Below, piece after piece: positions 13,843 through 37,975 of a stretch of 50,208 bases of DNA. The stretch is from Octopus bimaculoides (Eukaryota), in NCBI RefSeq assembly GCF_001194135.2, contig NC_068994.1, forward strand, positions 38,706,467-38,756,674, written 5' to 3'. The translations under genes were made by a program, and so were the position numbers. Each line of letters starts with the position of its first letter. The stretch's first letter is position 1. Below the pieces are notes generated by a model. The model was not told where the DNA came from. It did not search any database and worked only from the letters and a program-made list of their open reading frames with translations.

Positions 13843-13932
13843 GTAAGGCCTGGCACATATTCTATCAGTCTCTTTTGCAGAACTGCTGAGTTACAGGGGT
13901 GTAAATAAACCAGCACTAGTTATCAAGCAGTG

Positions 13933-13992
<60 letters not shown>

Positions 13993-14149
13993 CAAGCTTC
14001 TTTCAGTTTTTCTCTTCCAGATCCACTCACAAGACTTTGGCCAGCTCAAGGCTATAGTAGAATGTACTTGCCCAAAGTGTCACACAGTCAGACCGAACCC
14101 AGAAACATGTGGTTGGGAAGTAAACTTCTTACCACACACCCATGCCTGT
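13843..14149 (-). mobile_element. Family B SINE with (CA)n and G-type tail
   Basis: CTATAGTAGAA..ACTTGCCCAAAGTG..TGTGGTTGGGAAG..CTTCTTACCAC..CCATGCCTG is the inverted B head. The 5' side TATTCTATCAGTCTCTTTTGC.GAACTGCT.AGTTAC is the inverted tail also seen at 8340-8500. Confidence 0.8.
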
Positions 14150-14229
14150 ATCTACTCGATAAATATGACTATACTTCACACTGTTATATGAAAAACCTGT
14201 CGAATTCCATTCATTCTCTTAGTTACTAT

Positions 14230-14620
14230 AAGTATACTACATACAGAGAGGGAGAGAGAGACCTACTGCAGATGTTATTTAGCATTCCTTCTCTTCTCGC
14301 TGTACCAAAGTGAAACTATGTGTAAGAAGTGCAATGCAGTATGACAGTGAACATGGAGAGTATTTAGATTAATTGGAGAGGAAGGAACTTGGATATAGTG
14401 TGGTTTATGCTGGATATGTGATGTATGGTGATAACTGACAAGAAAGGCTGTGGGAAAGTAAGTTGAAAGAGCAGGTTGGATTTAAATGATGTTATCTGAT
14501 CTATAAAGGGAAGATGTTTTCTGCTGATAGGGTACAAATAAAGAGGGAATGGATAAATATAGCTGGGTGGTAAAATATGATGTGTGTTGATGGTTGGTGA
14601 ATGATAACATAAGCAGCGGT
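14230..14620 (+). pseudogene. Decayed RTE-like LINE fragment (post-RT region)
   Basis: About 14313-14360 translates as KLCVRSAMQYDSEH, resembling the RTE motif CVRSAMLYGSETW. It is purine-rich with stops. Confidence 0.5.
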
Positions 14621-25430: not shown

Positions 25431-25550
25431 GTTAATGTTAACATATTTAATTTAGTGAACATAAAAAACTTTAAAAATGGTGATTTTATAGTAAGTGAAA
25501 AACAACTATAAATGTATATATATATATATATATATATATACTATTGGTTC

Positions 25551-25649
25551 TTAATGCATCTCTGAAGAGTGGAATTACTGATAATAAGATGATCTTTAGA
25601 TCACTTTGTGATTATAGTAATATCCGCGAAACGATCGTAAGATATTTAA
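25551..25649 (+). ncRNA. Type I hammerhead ribozyme motif, minimal stem III (Penelope/retrozyme-like), long stem II
   Basis: ATCT(25558-61) pairs with AGAT(25640-43) as stem I. Core CTGAAGA at 25562-68. A 59-nt stem II hairpin (25569-25627, about 24 bp) is closed by G-C. GAAA at 25628-31, then AC-GATC-GT stem III, with a GUA cleavage triplet (cut predicted after 25639). All invariant core bases are present. Confidence 0.9.
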
Positions 25650-26386
25650 CTCTTTAAATTTTAGGTTCCTTTATATTTTATATTTTAGACTTTACAATAT
25701 TCATGCCTAATTACGCATAAATTTTTATACGTATATATATTCACACATATATTTATCTATATTCAGATTTTTATATATATTGATATTTATATTTCGTATA
25801 TTTATGTTTTAAATTTTAAATTTATTATGTTGCCGTGTCATGTTGGATGTATGTCTTTCAAAATATTAAATATTGATTTCCTGAGTATATTATTGATGAG
25901 TTTATGAATTTATTAATAATATAAAAACACATATATACACATTTATTTGCTCAAGATAATTGAGCACTCAACATAAGTTCAGTTATATATTCTTTTAGAA
26001 TATTACTTATAAAAGTTATATATATATATGATAAAGTCTGTAAAATATCAATTTACTAGTTTATTTCTCAATTCAGTAATTATACTTACATTTTCACAAT
26101 AAATATAATCATATTTTTCTCAACACTTGGTAGTTTTTTTCTTTAATGAAGTCTTACCAAATGAAACTTAGCTCAATGCTACCTATTGATATAAAAAAAA
26201 AATCTCCTCACCCAAGAACAAGACTATAAGTATGCAATAATGACAAAAACATGATTTTTTTGTTTTACAAATAAGACAACATACTCTATGCAGGCTTGGA
26301 AAGCAAGGCAAAGATGTGGACCATAGCCAAGACGAAAAGGAAAAAAAATTAGATTTATCATTATCAGTATTATTATTATTTTTATT

Positions 26387-29374: not shown

Positions 29375-29630
29375 CCCTGTTGACAGGGCCACAGATATTA
29401 AATAAAGTATTAAAACACTTCTGCAAATTAACAGCCCCAGTTCTGTGAAGCTACTGGATTTGTTGTGTATATAAACAGACTGGCTACTTATTTTTCTGGG
29501 ACTGGTCAAGTGAGTAAGAAACATTTGATGAGAACCCAGTAAGATTTAAAAATCTCTGAAAGCTGTTTATAATTTCTTTTCTCAAACTATGGAGAAATAT
29601 TTAAATTTGCTATCTTTGTATGCCTATTAC

Positions 29631-29792
29631 GTAGGCATGCTTGTATGGTAAGAAGCTGATTCCCAACCACGTGGTTTTGGGTTCACTCCAACTGAGTGGC
29701 ACCTTGGGCAAGTGTCTTCTACTATAGTCTTGAGCCAACCAAAGCCTTGTGTTTGGATTTGGTAAACAGGAACTGAAGGAAGCCCATTGTAC

Positions 29793-29836
<44 letters not shown>

Positions 29837-29868
29837 ATATCTATGTGTGTGTGTGTCTGTGTTTGTCT
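29631..29868 (+). mobile_element. tRNA-derived SINE (family B head) with (GT)n, abutting the mariner remnant
   Basis: GTAGGCATG..TGTATGGTAAGAAG..TTCCCAACCAC..GGGTTCA..GGCACCTTGGGCAAGTGTCTTCTACTATAG..GGATTTGGTA..AACTGAA.GAAGCCC, shared with 35541 and 37269. Confidence 0.85.
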
Positions 29869-30553
29869 CAAATGTAAAGAAATCAACCATTTTTGTGAAA
29901 TGCATCATCATTAGTGATGAAAAATGGATTGTCTACAATAACATCAGTCAAAAACAATCATTGTCCAAGTGTAATGAACCAGCACAAACCACATTGAAAG
30001 CTGAATTGCATAAAAAAAAGGTCATGCTGTCAATTTGGTGGGATTACAAAGGTGTTGTGTATTTTGAGCTGCTTCCAAGGAACCAAACGATTAATTCAGA
30101 TGTTTAATATCAACCTGGAGGAAGCAATCAGTGAAAAACAGCCAGAATTGGCAAATCGTAAAGGAATCATGTTCCACCAAGACAATACTAGACCACACAC
30201 GTCTTTGCTAACTTATGAAAAATTACTGGAGCTTGAATGGGAAGTGATGTCACACCTACCATATAGCTCTGACCTTGCACCATCAGATTACCATTTATTT
30301 CGAAGTTTGCAAAATTCTTTGAATAGTAAAACTTTCAATAATGATGGTTACCTGAAATCGCACTTGCTTCAGTTTTTCACTGATAAGGACCAGAAGTTCT
30401 ATGAGCATGGAATCATAAAGTTGCCAGAAAGATGGCAAAAGGTCATCGAACACAATAGAAGATATATAATTGATTAAAGTCACATTCTTTGTATGAAACA
30501 AAATAACTTTTATTTCACACCAAAGAACTGAAATTACTTTCTTGCCAAGCCAA
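29869..30553 (+). pseudogene. 5'-truncated mariner transposase remnant (D,D34D) with 3' TIR
   Basis: Translated pieces ISDEKWIVYNN, KKVMLSIWWDYKGVVYFELL, MFHQDNTRPH, YSSDLAPSDYHLF and KLPERWQKV are mariner motifs, with 34 residues between the 2nd and 3rd Asp. There is a frameshift or stop near 30105 and a frameshift near 29885. The end 30531-30553 reads TTGGCTTGGCAAGAAAGTAATTT on the minus strand, mariner-TIR-like and followed by TA. Confidence 0.93.
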
Positions 30554-31957: not shown

Positions 31958-32026
<69 letters not shown>

Positions 32027-32953
32027 NNNNNNNNNNNNNNNNNNNNNNNNNNNNNNNNNNNNNNNNNNNNNNNNNNNNNNNNNNNNNNNNNNNNNNNNNN
32101 NNNNNNNNNNNNNNNNNNNNNNNNNNNNNNNNNNNNNNNNNNNNNNNNNNNNNNNNNNNNNNNNNNNNNNNNNNNNNNNNNNNNNNNNNNNNNNNNNNNN
32201 NNNNNNNNNNNNNNNNNNNNNNNNNNNNNNNNNNNNNNNNNNNNNNNNNNNNNNNNNNNNNNNNNNNNNNNNNNNNNNNNNNNNNNNNNNNNNNNNNNNN
32301 NNNNNNNNNNNNNNNNNNNNNNNNNNNNNNNNNNNNNNNNNNNNNNNNNNNNNNNNNNNNNNNNNNNNNNNNNNNNNNNNNNNNNNNNNNNNNNNNNNNN
32401 NNNNNNNNNNNNNNNNNNNNNNNNNNNNNNNNNNNNNNNNNNNNNNNNNNNNNNNNNNNNNNNNNNNNNNNNNNNNNNNNNNNNNNNNNNNNNNNNNNNN
32501 NNNNNNNNNNNNNNNNNNNNNNNNNNNNNNNNNNNNNNNNNNNNNNNNNNNNNNNNNNNNNNNNNNNNNNNNNNNNNNNNNNNNNNNNNNNNNNNNNNNN
32601 NNNNNNNNNNNNNNNNNNNNNNNNNNNNNNNNNNNNNNNNNNNNNNNNNNNNNNNNNNNNNNNNNNNNNNNNNNNNNNNNNNNNNNNNNNNNNNNNNNNN
32701 NNNNNNNNNNNNNNNNNNNNNNNNNNNNNNNNNNNNNNNNNNNNNNNNNNNNNNNNNNNNNNNNNNNNNNNNNNNNNNNNNNNNNNNNNNNNNNNNNNNN
32801 NNNNNNNNNNNNNNNNNNNNNNNNNNNNNNNNNNNNNNNNNNNNNNNNNNNNNNNNNNNNNNNNNNNNNNNNNNNNNNNNNNNNNNNNNNNNNNNNNNNN
32901 NNNNNNNNNNNNNNNNNNNNNNNNNNGATTCCTTAAGGATCGTTCCCATTGTT

Positions 32954-33185
32954 TATATTTCCAAAGTTTCAAATTTATACATTTAAAAAAGAGAAATTCA
33001 ACACCGGAGATTTATCCATTATTTTACATCCAATGTAAACATTTCTGTGTTTGACTATATTCAACCATCAATAGGTTAAATATATTAATCGTCTCACACG
33101 TCATCAGGAATGTAAAATAATGGATAAATCTCCGGTGTTGAATTTCTCTTTTTTAAATGTATAAACTTGAAACTTTGGAAATATA
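32954..33185 (-). ncRNA. Type I hammerhead ribozyme motif embedded in a 78-bp inverted repeat (stem I)
   Basis: Minus strand reads ...TTTTACATTC-CTGATGA(33107-33101)-CGTGT...hairpin...ACACA-GAAA(33045-33042)-TGT-TT-ACA-T-T/GGATGTAAAA... Arms 32954-33031 and 33108-33185 pair at 76 of 78 positions, and the other two are G-U on the minus strand. Cleavage triplet AUU (cut predicted between 33032 and 33031). The pair closing stem II is a C-A mismatch. Confidence 0.78.
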
Positions 33186-33225
33186 TATATATGTATGTAT
33201 GTATGTATGTATATATATACATATA

Positions 33226-33398
33226 CAGGGTGGCCCAAAAGTAGGTTTACAGTTATTCAACTATCTCTTTCACATTCATATATTTGTCAAGCTCCCTTTC
33301 CAGTTTGTAAGATAGAAATATTTAAATGTAATAAAATGTTTTAGAAGAAATTTATAGTGCCTATATGATAACTGTAAACCTACTTTTGGGCCACCCTG
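33226..33398. mobile_element. Tc1/mariner-type MITE (173 bp), perfect 31-bp TIRs, TA target duplication
   Basis: CAGGGTGGCCCAAAAGTAGGTTTACAGTTAT (33226-33256) and its exact reverse complement (33368-33398), each flanked by TA. The interior is AT-rich and non-coding. Confidence 0.93.
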
Positions 33399-33859
33399 TA
33401 TAATACATATATATATGCCTGTACTTATGTTTGTGAGTTGGTAAGCAAACTACTTACCACACAGCCATTTCTGCACCTTCTCACTAAATTATCTAAAAAA
33501 ATTTTTTTTTATAAAGCCATTAAACTTCAGTGGTTGCAGAAACCTCATTTCTGTGATATATAATGGGATTACAAAATAACTCAGATGTCTCATTTTCAGC
33601 TTATAGTTTTCCAATGGACAAAAATCTGAAACAAACTGCTATTTCTTTTTAGATGCTTATTGCTTGCTTTAAATTGTTGGTTCTCAACCCTTTTATGGTA
33701 CCCTTTGCTTCCTATTTTACTCAGATGGACCCTCCTAGCCATTCGATATTTTTTAAAATCCTATTTTTATTTTTAGAATTAAATATTAAGAATTTTATTT
33801 AAAAAATAGTAAAAATATTTTGTGCATTGTAGAAGTATGAACGGTTTACTCTTTTATTC

Positions 33860-34348: not shown

Positions 34349-35540
34349 TTCTGTGTGTCTATTACAAGTTTAAAAACTGATTTTCTACCAAAAAGAGTAA
34401 TTTAGCTATTAGATAAAACATAGAATGCTGAAATGCATACCAGACCAAAATATCTAGTGGAGTCGATATATTCAACTAAAACTTTTAAATACAATGCTGC
34501 TCTGGCATGAACATAGTCCAATGACTGAAAGCAGTAGAAGTATAAACAGAAACTTAAAAGAGCAAGTTTGATCTTCTTATTCAAATATGCCTTTGTTGTT
34601 GACAAAATCTTTAAAACTACATATGTTCTTGGAAAGGCATGAACAACATGCACTCTTGTTTCTCTTTCACTTTCTTCCATGATAAATATGAGTTTTTGTA
34701 TTTATATAATAAATCAATATTAGATGAAGCACACGTAATTCTGAACTTCAATTAAATTACATTATTCGATGATCACTGGATTGATTACAATTAAATATTA
34801 CTGGCTCTTCAATCAACGACAATCCCTAGGGTAAATACTTTGCCTGCCCTCCATCTTTTTTCAATGGTTGTCTTTCATGAAACTGATGTCATAAGAGCAG
34901 AGTTAATTTCCTGCCTATTTAGTTGATAATGCTTAACTGAAGCAATGTGGAACGTATAAATGGTTTTAAGGATAACTTAATTTGATCAGTTGTCTTAAAC
35001 ATCTCTTAAATATTCCACATTATGAGATGTGCCACAGGAAAATTTTATCAACTATACAATTTGGCAATTAGCTAGATGAATGGGTCATTCCCCATAGCAT
35101 TTTCTTATAAAAGGTCTTAATAGAATTGAATTTGGTAAGCTGTAGCTTGTTATATAACTGCACTTATCACTCCTATTCATATAAGATACACACAACCACA
35201 GGATGAAATAGCTTAATAAGAAGCCATCTTAATTAGATTAAGAGTTAAGTGCTATTTCTTTTAATTATCACCTGTTTTAGTCATCCCAGACCACCGTGAG
35301 CCAATGAGGAATCTTCTATGTGGTCGTTCAATTTGCTAAAAATAGCAGCCAAATCTTTTTCAAAATACACCTAAGACTTAAAATAATGTAGTCTATGGTG
35401 CACTCTAACTGAAAAAAATGATTGGATGGTCACAAATGGAATGTCTTTGATCACAGATATGTTCAGTCAGTGCCTGCTTGGGATTAAATAGTAACAATTT
35501 TAACTCTTCTGTCTTATTAATCAGTCTTAGAATAAACTTT

Positions 35541-35693
35541 GGCTGTATGGTAAGAAACTTGCTTCCCAACCACATGATTCTAGATTCAGTCTCACTGTGT
35601 GGCACCTTGGGCAAGTGTCTTTTACTATAGCCTTGGGTCAACCAAAGTCTTGAGAGTGGATTTGGTAGACGGAAACTGAAAGAAGCCCATCGT
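35541..35693 (+). mobile_element. Family B SINE head
   Basis: Same head and core as 29631 (GGCACCTTGGGCAAGTGTCTT, GGATTTGGTAGACGGAAACTGAAAGAAGCCC). Confidence 0.82.
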
Positions 35694-35714
35694 ATGTATG
35701 TATATATATATATA

Positions 35715-35910
35715 TACATATCATCATCATCATCTTCATCATCATCATTTAACGTCCATTTTCCATGCTGGCATGGGTTGGACGGTTTGACTGAGGTCTG
35801 GAGAGCCAGGAGCTGCACCAGGCTCCAATCTGATCTGGCAATGTTTCTACAGCTGGATGCCCTTCCTAATGCCAACCACTCCGATAGAGTAGTGGGTGAT
35901 TTTTACATGC
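35715..35910 (-). mobile_element. Family D 3' end, inverted
   Basis: CATCATCATTTAACGTCCATTTTCCATGCTGGCATGGGTTGGACGG..TTTCTACAGCTGGATGCCCTTCCTAATGCCAACCAC..TTTTACATGCCA. Confidence 0.8.
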
Positions 35911-36300: not shown

Positions 36301-37268
36301 ATGAAAGGTTAGAGTGTGACAGAGAAACAGAGAAGCAGAAATAAGTGTCTTCTTATAGAGGAGGTACATGGTTACCTGGCTAGAGAGAGAAAGAGAGAAA
36401 GAGAGAATAGAGAGAGAGAAGAGAAAGAGAAGGAGAGGATGAGAGAGAGAGAGAGGTGCAAGAAAGAGGACAAAAACAGTTGTGATCATGTAAAGAAGAT
36501 ACTTGGTTACCTAGCCAGAAGAAAAAGTATACATACATAACATACATACGTACATGTGTGTGTGGTTTTTATACCTACATACATACATACATACATACAT
36601 ACATACATACATACATACACATAGAAGCATGACAGAGTTTAGTAGTTTAACATAATTTCCATGAAATGTCACTCGCAGTGTATTGGTTAATCCTCGGCTG
36701 CAGTAGAAGGCACTTGTCCAAAATGCAGCAGAATAATGGGATCAAACCCCAAAAACTTACAACTTGCAAAGCTAACTTTATAACCATGTATTTCTGCTGC
36801 TTCTTTAATTCATATAATATTAACTTTGTATTATAGCTTTTTGCTTATGTTTAATGCCAATGACATTAAAACAAAGAGTTAGAACACAGTTATGTTGCAG
36901 CCATTATATTATCTTGATACCACAAGCTGTGACATAGAAATTTCTTTTATAGCAATCTACTTTTTGATTAAAGAAATCAAATCAAATCAAATCAAAAATG
37001 AACTGTTAAAAATAATTGCTACCCTAATTGAGATTTGATTAAAGTTTCATGCAGAATGTGGAGAGTTGGTGGTGGTGGTGGGGAGTCAACTGAATGGCAA
37101 CAAAAATATTTCCTTTTTATTTTGAAACTGATTAAGGATTGTTGTTGCTTAGCCCCAGGTCAACCCTGATCAAAGAAACCTATGATCAATGGTATTCTAT
37201 CTATTACCATGTTTTATGTTTTTTTTTTTATGAGAATTTCTATAACAATTATCTGTGTTTGTGTCTGG

Positions 37269-37975
37269 GTGCAGGCATGGGTGTGTGGTTAGAAATTTTC
37301 TTCCCAACCACATGGTCCCAGGTTCAATCCCATTGCATGGCACCTTGGGTAAGTGTCTTCTACTATAGTCTTGAGCCAACCAAAACCTTCTGAGTGGATT
37401 TGGTAGAGAGAAGCTAAAAGGTGGCGAGCTGGCAGAAACGTTAGCGTGCCGGGTGAAATGCTTGGCAGTATTTCGTCTGCCGCTACGTTCTAAGTTCAAA
37501 TTCCGCCGAGGTCAACTTTACCTTTCATCCTTTCGGGGTCGATTAAATAAGTACCAGTTACACACTGGGGTCGATATAATCGACTTAATCCGTTTGTCTG
37601 TCCTTGTTTGTCCCCTCTGTGTGTAGCCCCTTGTGGGCAGTAAAGAAATAAGAGAATAGCTAAAAGAAATCCATTGCATATAAATATGTGAAGGTATATG
37701 TGTATGTGTATGTGTATGTACTTCTGTGTTTGTGTCTCCTTGTCTTGACTTCTCATCAGAGTTGTAAATGAGTGTCGCAATCATACAAGTAGTGTCAATC
37801 AGTTTCAATACTCTGCAATACTCCATGTCTGGCCATGGAGAAATATTACTTTTGCTTGGAAACAGGTGAAGGTTGGCAACAGGAAGAGTATCCAGTCATT
37901 CAAAAACTGCTCAAACAAATTCCATCTGACACATGCAAACATGGAAAATTGGAAATTAAATGATGTTGATGGTCG
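37269..37975 (+). mobile_element. Family B SINE interrupted by a nested family C SINE
   Basis: Head 37269-37420, resuming after 37657 with AAGAAATCCATTG, a (GT)-like tract and a tail with TTGGCAACAGGAAGAGTATCCAG ending in ATTAAATGATG. Confidence 0.8.
37421..37657 (+). mobile_element. Young family C SINE nested in a family B SINE
   Basis: GGCGAGCTGGCAGAAACGTTAGC...GTTCAAATTCCGCCGAGGTCAACTTTACCTTTCATCCTTTCGGGGTCGATTAAATAAGTACCAG with CpGs retained. Flanked by AGCTAAAAG at 37412-20 and 37658-66. Confidence 0.88.

What the first reader, a model, noticed from the sequence alone, without database searches (positions are those of the whole stretch)
32954..33185. Hammerhead ribozyme whose stem I is a 78-bp near-perfect inverted repeat
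Seen: what looks like a foldback or MITE has a 76-nt spacer that, on the minus strand, is exactly a hammerhead core: CUGAUGA, a bulged stem II (GUGU/ACAC, GAC/GUC, UAUAUUUAACC/GGUUGAAUAUA), GAAA, stem III AUGU-UU-ACAU and an AUU site. Both arms start precisely at the core. The two non-Watson-Crick positions in stem I and one in stem II are G-U on the minus strand but A-C on the plus strand, which points to the minus strand as the functional RNA. The C-A mismatch closing stem II could be a single CG-to-CA change. Established: natural type I hammerheads normally have a short stem I. Inference: a ribozyme locked by a long duplex, either a distinct mobile RNA design or an inverted pLTR junction of a Penelope-like element. 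After cleavage the products would stay annealed as long dsRNA (a Dicer or ADAR substrate). The left arm starts 28 bp after a 900-N gap, so the parent element may be hidden.
Basis: partly seen in the sequence, partly recalled or inferred. Interest (0 to 1): 0.88.

Follow-up and report, generated by a model that had tools for sequence, protein, structure and literature searches.

The report
Hammerhead ribozyme inside an inverted-repeat retroelement scar
A 232-bp hairpin in an animal-type genome carries a real hammerhead ribozyme core at its tip, but the long "stem I" is most likely a by-product of how a Penelope-like retroelement fragment inserted (two short inverted copies joined at the ribozyme), not a new ribozyme design.

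Summary
Arms 32954-33031 and 33108-33185 are 78 nt with two mismatches. On the minus strand the 76-nt spacer reads CUGAUGA / 55-nt helix II / GAA / AUGUUUACAU / U, in exact register with the arms. Shuffles reproduce this about 1-2 times per million.

Rfam's hammerhead models do not recognise it: a C and an A flank helix II. No second copy could be found in the window or in any collection.

A second, unrelated hammerhead with the same layout lies at 25562-25639(+). It has a 59-nt helix II and about 90 nt from the cut site to a TA-rich flank, and it scores 18 bits against Rfam Hammerhead_1.

Both sit in (TA)n microsatellites. Their geometry matches published Penelope-like element (PLE) insertions: reverse transcription starts 85-92 nt past the hammerhead cut, a 30-40-nt tail occurs at one end, targets are AT-rich, both DNA strands are primed, and inverted 5'-truncated twins are common.

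Best reading (about 0.5): a dead, severely truncated PLE- or retrozyme-type insertion. Its inverted twin ends at the ribozyme's stem I or cleavage site.

Rivals: a propagating hairpin-ribozyme element, an assembly artefact, or chance. Genome-wide copies would decide.

The parts
33108..33185 (-). 5' arm, the 5' strand of 'stem I' (positions 2.1 to 2.78). Interpreted as the inverted 5'-truncated twin, i.e. the reverse complement of the 78 nt that follow the cleavage site. The innermost few nt may be the native stem I strand (U2.2 pairs with G1.2 as a wobble).
   Evidence: 78 nt, 76/78 complementary to 32954-33031; fully paired in the MFE.
33101..33107 (-). Hammerhead core box C3-A9: CUGAUGA
   Evidence: starts immediately after the 5' arm.
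33046..33100 (-). Helix II domain, 55 nt. From the core outward: an unpaired or mismatched C (33100) and A (33046); GUGU/ACAC (G10.1-C11.1); internal loop GA/AA; GAC/GUC; a 6-nt bulge GAUUAA; an 11-bp helix with one U.G; a 7-nt loop UAUUGAU.
   Evidence: MFE and target structure; parsing.
33043..33045 (-). Core box G12 A13 A14 (GAA)
33033..33042 (-). Helix III, AUGUUUACAU: A15.1-U16.1, U-A, G-C plus loop UUUA. It is quasi-palindromic. The self-duplex of two copies is -8.6 kcal/mol, as in dimer-acting metazoan type I hammerheads.
   Evidence: PMC4209133 for short palindromic helix III.
33032..33032 (-). H17 = U. The predicted self-cleavage site is 3' of this base, between 33032 and 33031.
   Evidence: position in the motif; cleavage itself is not tested.
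32954..33031 (-). 3' arm, the 3' strand of 'stem I' (positions 1.1 to 1.78). Interpreted as the 78 nt between the ribozyme cut site and the proximal reverse-transcription start (3' end) of the element.
   Evidence: The published distance in the Anolis PLE is 85-92 nt (PMC11167929).
32927..32953 (-). 27 nt (AACAAUGGGAACGAUCCUUAAGGAAUC on the minus strand) that continue the sense copy past the arm and run into the 900-N gap. They are present on this side only. Candidate PLE 'tail' (30-40 nt between two RT start sites), or else host flank.
   Evidence: The tail concept comes from PMC8557442 and PMC11167929. The assignment is an inference.
33186..33221 (.). (TA)n/(TATG)n microsatellite abutting the 5' arm. 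Candidate AT-rich target of the insertion.
31996..32026 (.). (TA)n run at the left edge of the gap 32027-32926. With 33186-33221 it may be the two halves of one microsatellite split by the insertion.
   Evidence: 8 of 10 gaps in the window break in microsatellites.

Best explanation
The locus is a short, dead insertion of a hammerhead-bearing retroelement of the Penelope-like (PLE) or PLE-derived 'non-LTR retrozyme' kind, sitting in a (TA)n microsatellite.

Composition. The sense copy, on the minus strand, is severely 5'-truncated. It runs from the ribozyme core (33107) through helix II, helix III and the cut site, then 78 nt further (to 32954), plus a tail of at least 27 nt that disappears into the gap. 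The 5' arm (33185-33108) is a second, shorter, inverted 5'-truncated copy of the same 3'-terminal 78 nt.

How it would arise. Both 3' ends of the broken target prime reverse transcription. This is shown in vitro for an Anolis PLE and is analogous to L1 twin priming. The two cDNAs have the same polarity, so they can only be joined where the RNA is self-complementary. The short native stem I of the ribozyme supplies exactly that microhomology. The inverted copy therefore ends at or within a few nt of position 1.1, either because it ran off a self-cleaved RNA or because its end annealed through stem I. The result looks like a 78-bp stem I.

Consequence. The ribozyme is a real descendant of a type I hammerhead of the PLE style: an extra base after A9, G10.1-C11.1, a long helix II, and a short quasi-palindromic helix III. 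In this copy it is probably weak or inactive, because of the extra A before G12 and the lack of loop-loop contacts.

What is shown and what is inferred. Shown: the anatomy, its non-random nature, the flanks, and the sister motif. Inferred: the PLE or retrozyme parentage, the twin-priming origin, and the tail.
For: 1. The core, helices and register are real and non-random.
2. A second, sequence-unrelated hammerhead lies in the same window at 25562-25639(+). It has the same unusual layout: 59-nt helix II, palindromic helix III ACGAUCGU, 4-bp stem I, and about 90 nt from the cut to a TA-rich flank, with (TA)n immediately upstream. It hits Rfam Hammerhead_1 over the full model (18 bits, E 0.045). 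This shows that short solo hammerhead insertions in (TA)n exist in this genome, and that the normal stem I is short.
3. Published PLE features match quantitatively. RT starts 111-118 nt into the ORF with the hammerhead cut at +26, which is 85-92 nt downstream of the cut. An optional 30-40-nt tail lies between two RT start sites. Targets are AT-rich. The protein cleaves and extends both DNA strands (PMC11167929). Here the values are 78 nt, at least 27 nt on one side only, and (TA)n.
4. PLE insertions are highly 5'-truncated. They 'often' carry an inverted 5'-truncated copy at the 5' end, prefer (TA)n, and break short-read assemblies (PMC8557442).
5. PLE hammerhead hallmarks are a nucleotide between 9 and 10.1, a conserved G10.1-C11.1, a large helix II that may carry a bulged base, and a palindromic helix III. 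Most copies are solo and truncated, and some pairs lie on opposite strands 100-700 bp apart (PMC4209133).
6. One of the two arm mismatches is the G1.2.U2.2 pair next to the core, as expected if the innermost pairs are the native stem I.
7. Solo monomers of PLE-derived retrozymes are common (bioRxiv 10.64898/2026.07.22.740005).
Against: - No homologous copy, parent element or consensus could be obtained, so parentage rests on architecture alone.
- No RT or GIY-YIG open frame was found in the window. Only a mariner transposase remnant was seen among the 20 longest clean open frames.
- Rfam does not score this motif as a hammerhead at all.
- The left boundary is hidden by the 900-N gap, so the 'tail' and the second (TA)n flank are conjecture.
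- The 3'-terminal sequences of HHR-1 and HHR-2 share no significant similarity.
- The published PLE geometry comes from one vertebrate element.
- A junction exactly at the core could also be a selected design.
Confidence: 0.5

Rival explanations
1. A propagating hairpin-ribozyme element. The 232-nt unit is itself the mobile RNA: either a small retrozyme-like RNA, linear or circular, whose rod is the 78-bp helix I capped by the hammerhead, or a MITE-like family built this way. The ribozyme opens the hairpin tip, and the element is copied as a unit, starting at its UAUA end in (TA)n targets.
For: Metazoan non-LTR retrozymes are 170-400 nt, have low GC, carry a type I hammerhead, and form 'highly self-paired' circRNAs (PMC7229834). 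This unit is 232 nt, 26% GC and almost fully paired. Its two outer ends, if joined, would give a self-complementary UAUAUAUA that could close a circle. Both arms begin exactly at the core. The three wobbles are G.U on the ribozyme strand.
Against: The locus holds a single unit with no tandem neighbour on the visible side. A 78-bp duplex with no bulges is unlike selected RNA rods and leaves no loop 1 for the usual helix I-II contact. The sister motif HHR-2 has an ordinary 4-bp stem I. The wobble asymmetry has p of about 0.25. No other copy was found anywhere that could be searched. A DNA transposon has no known use for a ribozyme.
Confidence: 0.22
2. An assembly artefact. The inverted left arm next to the gap is a fold-back error at a contig end, and the real locus holds only one arm plus the ribozyme.
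For: The left arm lies 27 nt from a 900-N gap. The scaffold has 10 gaps, mostly in microsatellites. PLE structures are known to upset short-read assemblies (PMC8557442).
Against: The arms differ at two positions, whereas a fold-back copy would be identical. The repeat stops cleanly at 32954 and continues into unique sequence rather than mirroring the (TA)n flank on the other side. The native stem I complementarity is far shorter than any assembler k-mer.
Confidence: 0.07
3. An ordinary foldback or MITE whose loop resembles a hammerhead core by chance.
For: Rfam sees only generic miRNA-like hairpins here. The crude pattern CTGATGA...GAAA is not enriched in the window (3 hits against 1.5 expected). 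A TA target duplication cannot be excluded, because the arm ends in the palindrome TATA. A mariner-type MITE lies 37 bp away.
Against: The in-register motif occurs in about 1.3-1.7 per million shuffles of the same spacer, even with a lax descriptor. There are two descriptor hits in the window against 0.0067 expected. Helix II is far stronger than the descriptor demands.
Confidence: 0.05

Closest known systems
Hammerheads in the pseudo-LTRs of Penelope-like elements (Cervera & de la Pena 2014, PMC4209133)
   Same: Type I topology and the full CUGANGA...GAAA...UH core. An extra nucleotide after A9 followed by G10.1-C11.1. An enlarged helix II that may carry a bulged base. A short quasi-palindromic helix III. 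Mostly solo, truncated genomic copies, some in opposite orientation close together.
   Different: Helix II is 55 nt here, against 6-8 bp. There is an additional A between C11.1 and G12. Helix I is 78 bp here, against 2-6 bp. No PLE ORF or pLTR homology could be shown.
PLE insertion architecture: 5' truncation, inverted 5'-truncated twin, one-sided 30-40-nt tail, AT-rich/(TA)n targets, priming on both DNA strands (Craig et al. 2021, PMC8557442; PMC11167929, 2024)
   Same: An inverted repeat with the element's 3' ends pointing outward. The distance from cut site to element end is 78 nt, against 85-92 nt published. An extra stretch of at least 27 nt is present on one side only. (TA)n lies at the visible flank and at the far side of the gap.
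   Different: The copies are extremely short (154+ and 78 nt). The junction coincides with the ribozyme's stem I or cut site, which I did not find described in the papers read here. The left boundary is hidden.
Metazoan non-LTR retrozymes (Cervera & de la Pena 2020, PMC7229834; bioRxiv 10.64898/2026.07.22.740005)
   Same: Size (232 nt), low GC, type I hammerhead, high self-pairing. Solo monomers are known, and the elements derive from PLE pLTRs.
   Different: There is no tandem repeat at this locus. The duplex is perfect rather than an imperfect rod. There are no loop 1/loop 2 contacts. CircRNA formation is untested.
L1 twin-priming inversions (Ostertag & Kazazian 2001; from my own knowledge, not checked here)
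   Same: Two cDNAs are primed from both ends of the target break and joined by microhomology, giving an inverted 5' segment.
   Different: A different retroelement class. Here the microhomology would be supplied by a ribozyme helix.
Rfam Hammerhead_1 (RF00163)
   Same: The core bases and the order of the helices.
   Different: No hit even at E<=10. The neighbouring HHR-2 scores 18 bits against a gathering score of 34.

Membership tests
Hammerhead ribozyme, type I | Invariant core: C3 U4 G5 A6 N7 G8 A9, G12 A13 A14, A15.1-U16.1, H17 not G | tested here: met
   Read directly on the minus strand 33107-33032.
Hammerhead ribozyme, type I | Three helices meeting at the core, with helix I open-ended | tested here: met
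   The MFE is a three-way junction. The hammerhead structure is 1.3 kcal/mol above the MFE. Helix III is weak (pair probability about 0.12).
Hammerhead ribozyme, type I | G10.1-C11.1 pair stacked directly on the A9/G12 core | tested here: inconclusive
   The sequence is CUGAUGA-C-GUGU...ACAC-A-GAAA. G-C is present only if the C and the A are treated as extra bases. The C has precedent in PLE hammerheads. I found none for the A.
Hammerhead ribozyme, type I | Score at or above the Rfam gathering threshold for a hammerhead model | tested here: not met
   No hammerhead hit at gathering score or at E<=10 in 524-nt and 116-nt stretches.
Hammerhead ribozyme, type I | Helix I / helix II tertiary contacts (loop 1 - loop 2) | tested here: not met
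   Helix I is an uninterrupted duplex with no internal loop.
Hammerhead ribozyme, type I | Self-cleavage 3' of H17 | not testable with these tools
   Needs in vitro transcription or end-specific RNA-seq.
Hammerhead ribozyme, type I | Covariation in helices across homologues | not testable with these tools
   No homologue was found.
Penelope-like element (insertion or fragment) | RT plus GIY-YIG ORF, or sequence homology to a PLE pLTR | tested here: not met
   Only mariner PF01359 was found among the 20 longest clean open frames. No eukaryotic repeat library was available. This feature is not required of a truncated copy.
Penelope-like element (insertion or fragment) | Hammerhead a fixed short distance upstream of the element's 3' end (RT start) | tested here: met
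   78 nt here and about 90 nt for HHR-2, against 85-92 nt in the Anolis PLE. This is resemblance in geometry only.
Penelope-like element (insertion or fragment) | Insertion into an AT-rich / (TA)n target | tested here: inconclusive
   (TA)n abuts the right end, and (TA)n lies left of the gap. The left junction itself is hidden.
Penelope-like element (insertion or fragment) | Inverted 5'-truncated copy adjacent to the 5' end; optional one-sided 30-40-nt tail | tested here: inconclusive
   The inverted-repeat layout fits, and at least 27 nt are present on one side only. Without a consensus the tail cannot be told from host flank.
Metazoan non-LTR retrozyme | Tandem repeats of 170-400 bp, each carrying a type I hammerhead | tested here: not met
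   There is a single unit and no second copy in the window. Solo monomers do exist in the family.
Metazoan non-LTR retrozyme | Low GC, highly self-paired unit RNA | tested here: met
   GC 26%. 78-bp stem, z = -24.
MITE / foldback DNA transposon | Terminal inverted repeats with a target-site duplication, and many dispersed copies | tested here: inconclusive
   The inverted repeat is present. A TA duplication cannot be told from the palindromic TATA ends. No other copy lies in the window, and the genome was not searchable.

The most novel reading that the evidence does not exclude
The inverted twin may end at position 1.1 because it was reverse-transcribed from an RNA that the hammerhead had already cut in vivo (run-off at the 5'-OH end) and was then joined through stem I. 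If inversion junctions of this family pile up at the cleavage site genome-wide, they would be a genomic footprint of in vivo ribozyme processing during PLE or retrozyme retrotransposition. The role of the ribozyme in these elements is still described as unclear (PMC8557442). RNA ends at the presumptive cut site were not detected in public Anolis RNA-seq (PMC11167929).

Alternatively, the hairpin could be a self-propagating 'hairpin-capped ribozyme' element of a new design.
Probability: 0.2. Interest if true: 0.65.

Novelty: new member of a known kind. Interest (0 to 1): 0.4.

Why it matters
If the best reading is right, the locus is an ordinary retroelement scar and matters in three ways.
- It is a worked example showing that a 'giant stem I' can be an insertion by-product.
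- It shows that this genome holds hammerheads with 55-59-nt helix II. Rfam's hammerhead models miss one of them and score the other below threshold, so standard annotation would undercount them.
- It gives a concrete, cheap test: the distribution of inversion junctions relative to the cut site. That test bears on whether PLE-type hammerheads cleave in vivo and whether stem I guides cDNA joining, an open point in PLE biology.

Any transcript through the locus would carry 78 bp of near-perfect dsRNA. That is a plausible siRNA or editing substrate, whether or not the ribozyme works.

Tried and rejected
**Rfam**
- All families at gathering score on the whole window: nothing.
- Permissive scans of 524 nt and 116 nt around the motif: only generic miRNA-hairpin matches and no hammerhead.

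**Other copies**
- Arm with up to 3 mismatches in the window, and blastn with short words: only the two arms themselves.
- Exact-pattern scans for the arm and for the core+helices in viral contigs and metagenome contigs: zero hits.
- A chimeric query of every open frame through the arms and core against the 5.8-billion-protein collection: no hit at E<=10.
- Exact look-ups of the mariner ORF, to reach the source assembly: not on record.
- The bacterial/archaeal genome collection was not scanned, because it is irrelevant for a eukaryotic repeat.

**Supplements and parent ORF**
- Supplementary files of PMC8557442, which hold PLE consensus sequences: not held.
They were replaced by scans of the 20 longest clean open frames, which gave only mariner PF01359.

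**HHR-1 versus HHR-2**
- Homology outside the core: the best local alignment (helix II of HHR-1 against the 3' core and stem I of HHR-2, 23 columns) is reached by 38 of 500 shuffles. Rejected as chance.
- A relaxed scan allowing one core mismatch found no further remnants.

**Ideas considered and set aside**
- Tandem retrozyme array at this locus: there is no second unit.
- Two full inverted pLTRs each with a ribozyme: there is only one core.
- A plus-strand ribozyme: none.

Full report
**What is there.** The window is eukaryotic and animal-like. It has ten runs of N, eight of which break in microsatellites. It carries a mariner transposase remnant (PF01359, 4.6e-19) and a mariner-type MITE. 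From memory the dispersed SINE-like repeats look cephalopod, but no tool here could confirm the species.

At 32954-33185 there is a 232-bp inverted repeat. The arms are 32954-33031 and 33108-33185, 78 nt each, and they differ at two positions: 32973/33166 and 33030/33109. Both are A.C on the plus strand and G.U on the minus strand.

The 76-nt spacer, read on the minus strand, is CUGAUGA, then 55 nt that fold into a bulged hairpin, then GAA, then AUGUUUACAU, then U. Every invariant hammerhead position is therefore present. Helix I starts at the first base outside the core on both sides (C2.1-G1.1). H17 is the U at 33032, which puts the predicted cut between 33032 and 33031.

The strict hammerhead secondary structure lies 1.3 kcal/mol above the MFE. 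Two details differ from the finding. Helix III can only be 3 bp with a UUUA loop. It is also poorly populated in the ensemble (pair probability about 0.12).

**Is it chance?** No.
- Shuffling the spacer 3,000,000 times gave four sequences that satisfy a lax descriptor in register with the arms on either strand. The descriptor required CUGANGA at the junction, helix II of at least 3 bp, GAAA, helix III of at least 2 bp, and UH at the other junction. The factorised estimate is 1.7e-6.
- A window-wide scan with a similar descriptor gave two hits, against 0.0067 per shuffled window (300 shuffles).
- The crude string pattern alone is not enriched (3 against 1.5 expected). The signal lies in the register and the helices.

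**Is it a textbook hammerhead?** Not quite. Rfam finds no hammerhead here at gathering score, or at E<=10 in stretches of 524 nt and 116 nt. It reports only generic miRNA-like hairpins.

The deviations are as follows:
- a C between A9 and the first G of helix II;
- an A between the last C of helix II and G12;
- a 55-nt helix II;
- a helix I with no internal loop, so the usual loop 1-loop 2 contact is absent.

The first deviation is a described hallmark of hammerheads in Penelope-like elements. There, a nucleotide between 9 and 10.1 is conserved, followed by a conserved G10.1-C11.1, with an enlarged helix II that can carry a bulged base and a short palindromic helix III (PMC4209133). Read this way the motif has G10.1-C11.1 and U10.2-A11.2, like the Rfam consensus shown, and only the A before G12 is anomalous. 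Either way this copy is probably a weak ribozyme.

**A sister motif.** The descriptor's other hit, at 25562-25639 on the plus strand, has these parts:
- CUGAAGA;
- a 59-nt helix II closed by G10.1-C11.1;
- GAA;
- the perfect palindrome ACGAUCGU as helix III;
- A17;
- a 4-bp stem I.

Rfam aligns it to Hammerhead_1 over the whole model with a 55-nt insertion in helix II (18 bits, E 0.045, gathering score 34). It lies in a segment of about 190 bp bounded by (TA)n on the left and TA-rich DNA on the right. There are 22 nt upstream of the core and about 90 nt downstream of the cut. It shares no significant sequence with the first motif outside the core.

This sister motif shows three things:
- this genome holds solo hammerhead fragments with very long helix II;
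- they sit in (TA)n;
- their ordinary stem I is short.

**No parent, no siblings.** I found no second copy of the 232-bp unit in the window, in viral contigs, in metagenome contigs, or through its open frames in the protein collection. Exact look-ups to reach the source assembly failed. The 20 longest clean open frames contain no reverse transcriptase or GIY-YIG domain.

**What the literature adds.**
- PLE insertions are strongly 5'-truncated and often carry an inverted 5'-truncated copy at the 5' end. They often have a 30-40-bp tail at one end only, prefer microsatellites such as (TA)n, and commonly break short-read assemblies. Their hammerheads lie in the pseudo-LTR near the 3' end (PMC8557442).
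- For the Anolis element PAc, the purified protein cleaves and extends both DNA strands at AT-rich sites. Reverse transcription starts 111-118 nt into the ORF, and the hammerhead cut is at +26, so the start lies 85-92 nt downstream of the cut. The tail is the stretch between two RT start sites. RNA ends at the presumptive hammerhead cut site were not detected in public RNA-seq (PMC11167929).
- Metazoan non-LTR retrozymes are 170-400-nt, low-GC, highly self-paired units with type I hammerheads (PMC7229834). They derive from PLE pseudo-LTRs and often occur as solo monomers (bioRxiv 10.64898/2026.07.22.740005).

**Best explanation.** The numbers at this locus fit that picture. There are 78 nt from the cut to the end of the arm, at least 27 further nt on one side only that run into the gap, (TA)n directly at the other end, and (TA)n again on the far side of the gap.

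I therefore read the minus strand as follows:
- (TA)n;
- the inverted copy of +78..+1;
- the sense copy: core, helix II, helix III, cut site, +1..+78, tail;
- the gap, probably (TA)n.

Two cDNAs primed from the two ends of the break have the same polarity, so they can be joined only where the template is self-complementary. The cDNA that stops after copying the 3' strand of native stem I ends in the sequence of the 5' strand. It can anneal to the other cDNA just beyond the core. Extension then gives exactly arm - core - arm. The stop could be run-off on a self-cleaved RNA or a microhomology join. A single-cDNA snap-back at stem I gives the same product.

This account explains four things:
- the arms begin precisely at the core;
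- they are near-perfect, as a recent templated copy would be;
- only one core is present;
- one of the two mismatches is the G1.2.U2.2 pair beside the core, as expected if the innermost pairs are the native helix.

The steps from 'fits PLE geometry' to 'is a PLE or retrozyme fragment made by twin priming' are inference. I put the whole reading at about 0.5.

**Rivals.**
- A self-propagating hairpin-ribozyme element, either a retrozyme-like rod or circle or a MITE-like family, is not excluded (0.22). Size, GC and self-pairing fit, and joining the outer ends would give a self-complementary UAUAUAUA. Against it, the locus holds one unit, the duplex is unnaturally perfect, and the sister motif has a short stem I.
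- An assembly fold-back next to the gap is unlikely (0.07). The arms differ at two sites, and the repeat ends cleanly in unique sequence.
- Chance is very unlikely (0.05).

**Function.** If the minus strand is transcribed, the RNA would form a 78-bp duplex capped by a minimal-type hammerhead. Cleavage, if any, would open the tip and leave the two products annealed, so re-ligation and recognition as double-stranded RNA are both plausible. None of this was testable here.

**Verdict.**
- The 'new locked-ribozyme design' reading is not supported.
- The finding is a new member of a known kind.
- Its most interesting aspect is the coincidence of the inversion junction with the ribozyme's stem I and cut site. 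That turns the question of whether these ribozymes act in vivo into a simple genome-wide count.

Noticed in passing
window 25562-25639 (+), element about 25542-25730: Second hammerhead motif: CUGAAGA, a 59-nt helix II with G10.1-C11.1, GAA, palindromic helix III ACGAUCGU, A17, and a 4-bp stem I. Rfam Hammerhead_1 scores 18 bits (E 0.045, below the gathering score of 34). It is flanked by (TA)n on the left and TA-rich DNA on the right, about 90 nt from cut site to flank. It is unrelated in sequence to the first motif.
   Followed up: yes
window 33222-33402: A 181-bp mariner-type MITE with perfect 35-bp terminal inverted repeats (TATACAGGGTGGCCCAAAAGTAGGTTTACAGTTAT), set in the same microsatellite 37 bp from the hairpin. 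It gives a mir-548-like Rfam match of 44 bits, below the gathering score of 90.
   Followed up: partly
window 29766-30477 (+): Frameshifted mariner transposase remnant: Pfam Transposase_1 PF01359, E 4.6e-19 in 29766-30104. The C-terminal part, with ...YSSDLAPSDYHLF..., lies in the next frame (29998-30474).
   Followed up: partly
window gaps at 2895, 9509, 12892, 16742, 29328, 30870, 32027, 45579, 47215, 48449: Eight of the ten N runs begin or end in (TA)n, (CA)n or similar microsatellites. The gap beside the finding probably hides microsatellite rather than a large element. The stated 900 N is a scaffold estimate.
   Followed up: partly
window about 13909-14310 (+), 29613-29932 (-), 35408-35902 (-), 37200-37511 (-): A dispersed SINE-like repeat with at least four copies, recognisable from a shared open frame (...LPNPLxRLWLxQGYSxRHLPKVxxSxxEPxxMWLGxKFLT...). 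Each copy lies next to a microsatellite. From memory it resembles cephalopod SINEs; this was not tested.
   Followed up: no
window 33075-33095 (-) versus 25627-25649 (+): The 5' strand of helix II of the first hammerhead (GAGACGAUUAAUAUAUUUAAC) resembles the GAAA-helix III-stem I stretch of the second (GAAACGAUCGUAAGAUAUUUAAC). The local score is reached by 38 of 500 shuffles, so it is probably chance.
   Followed up: yes
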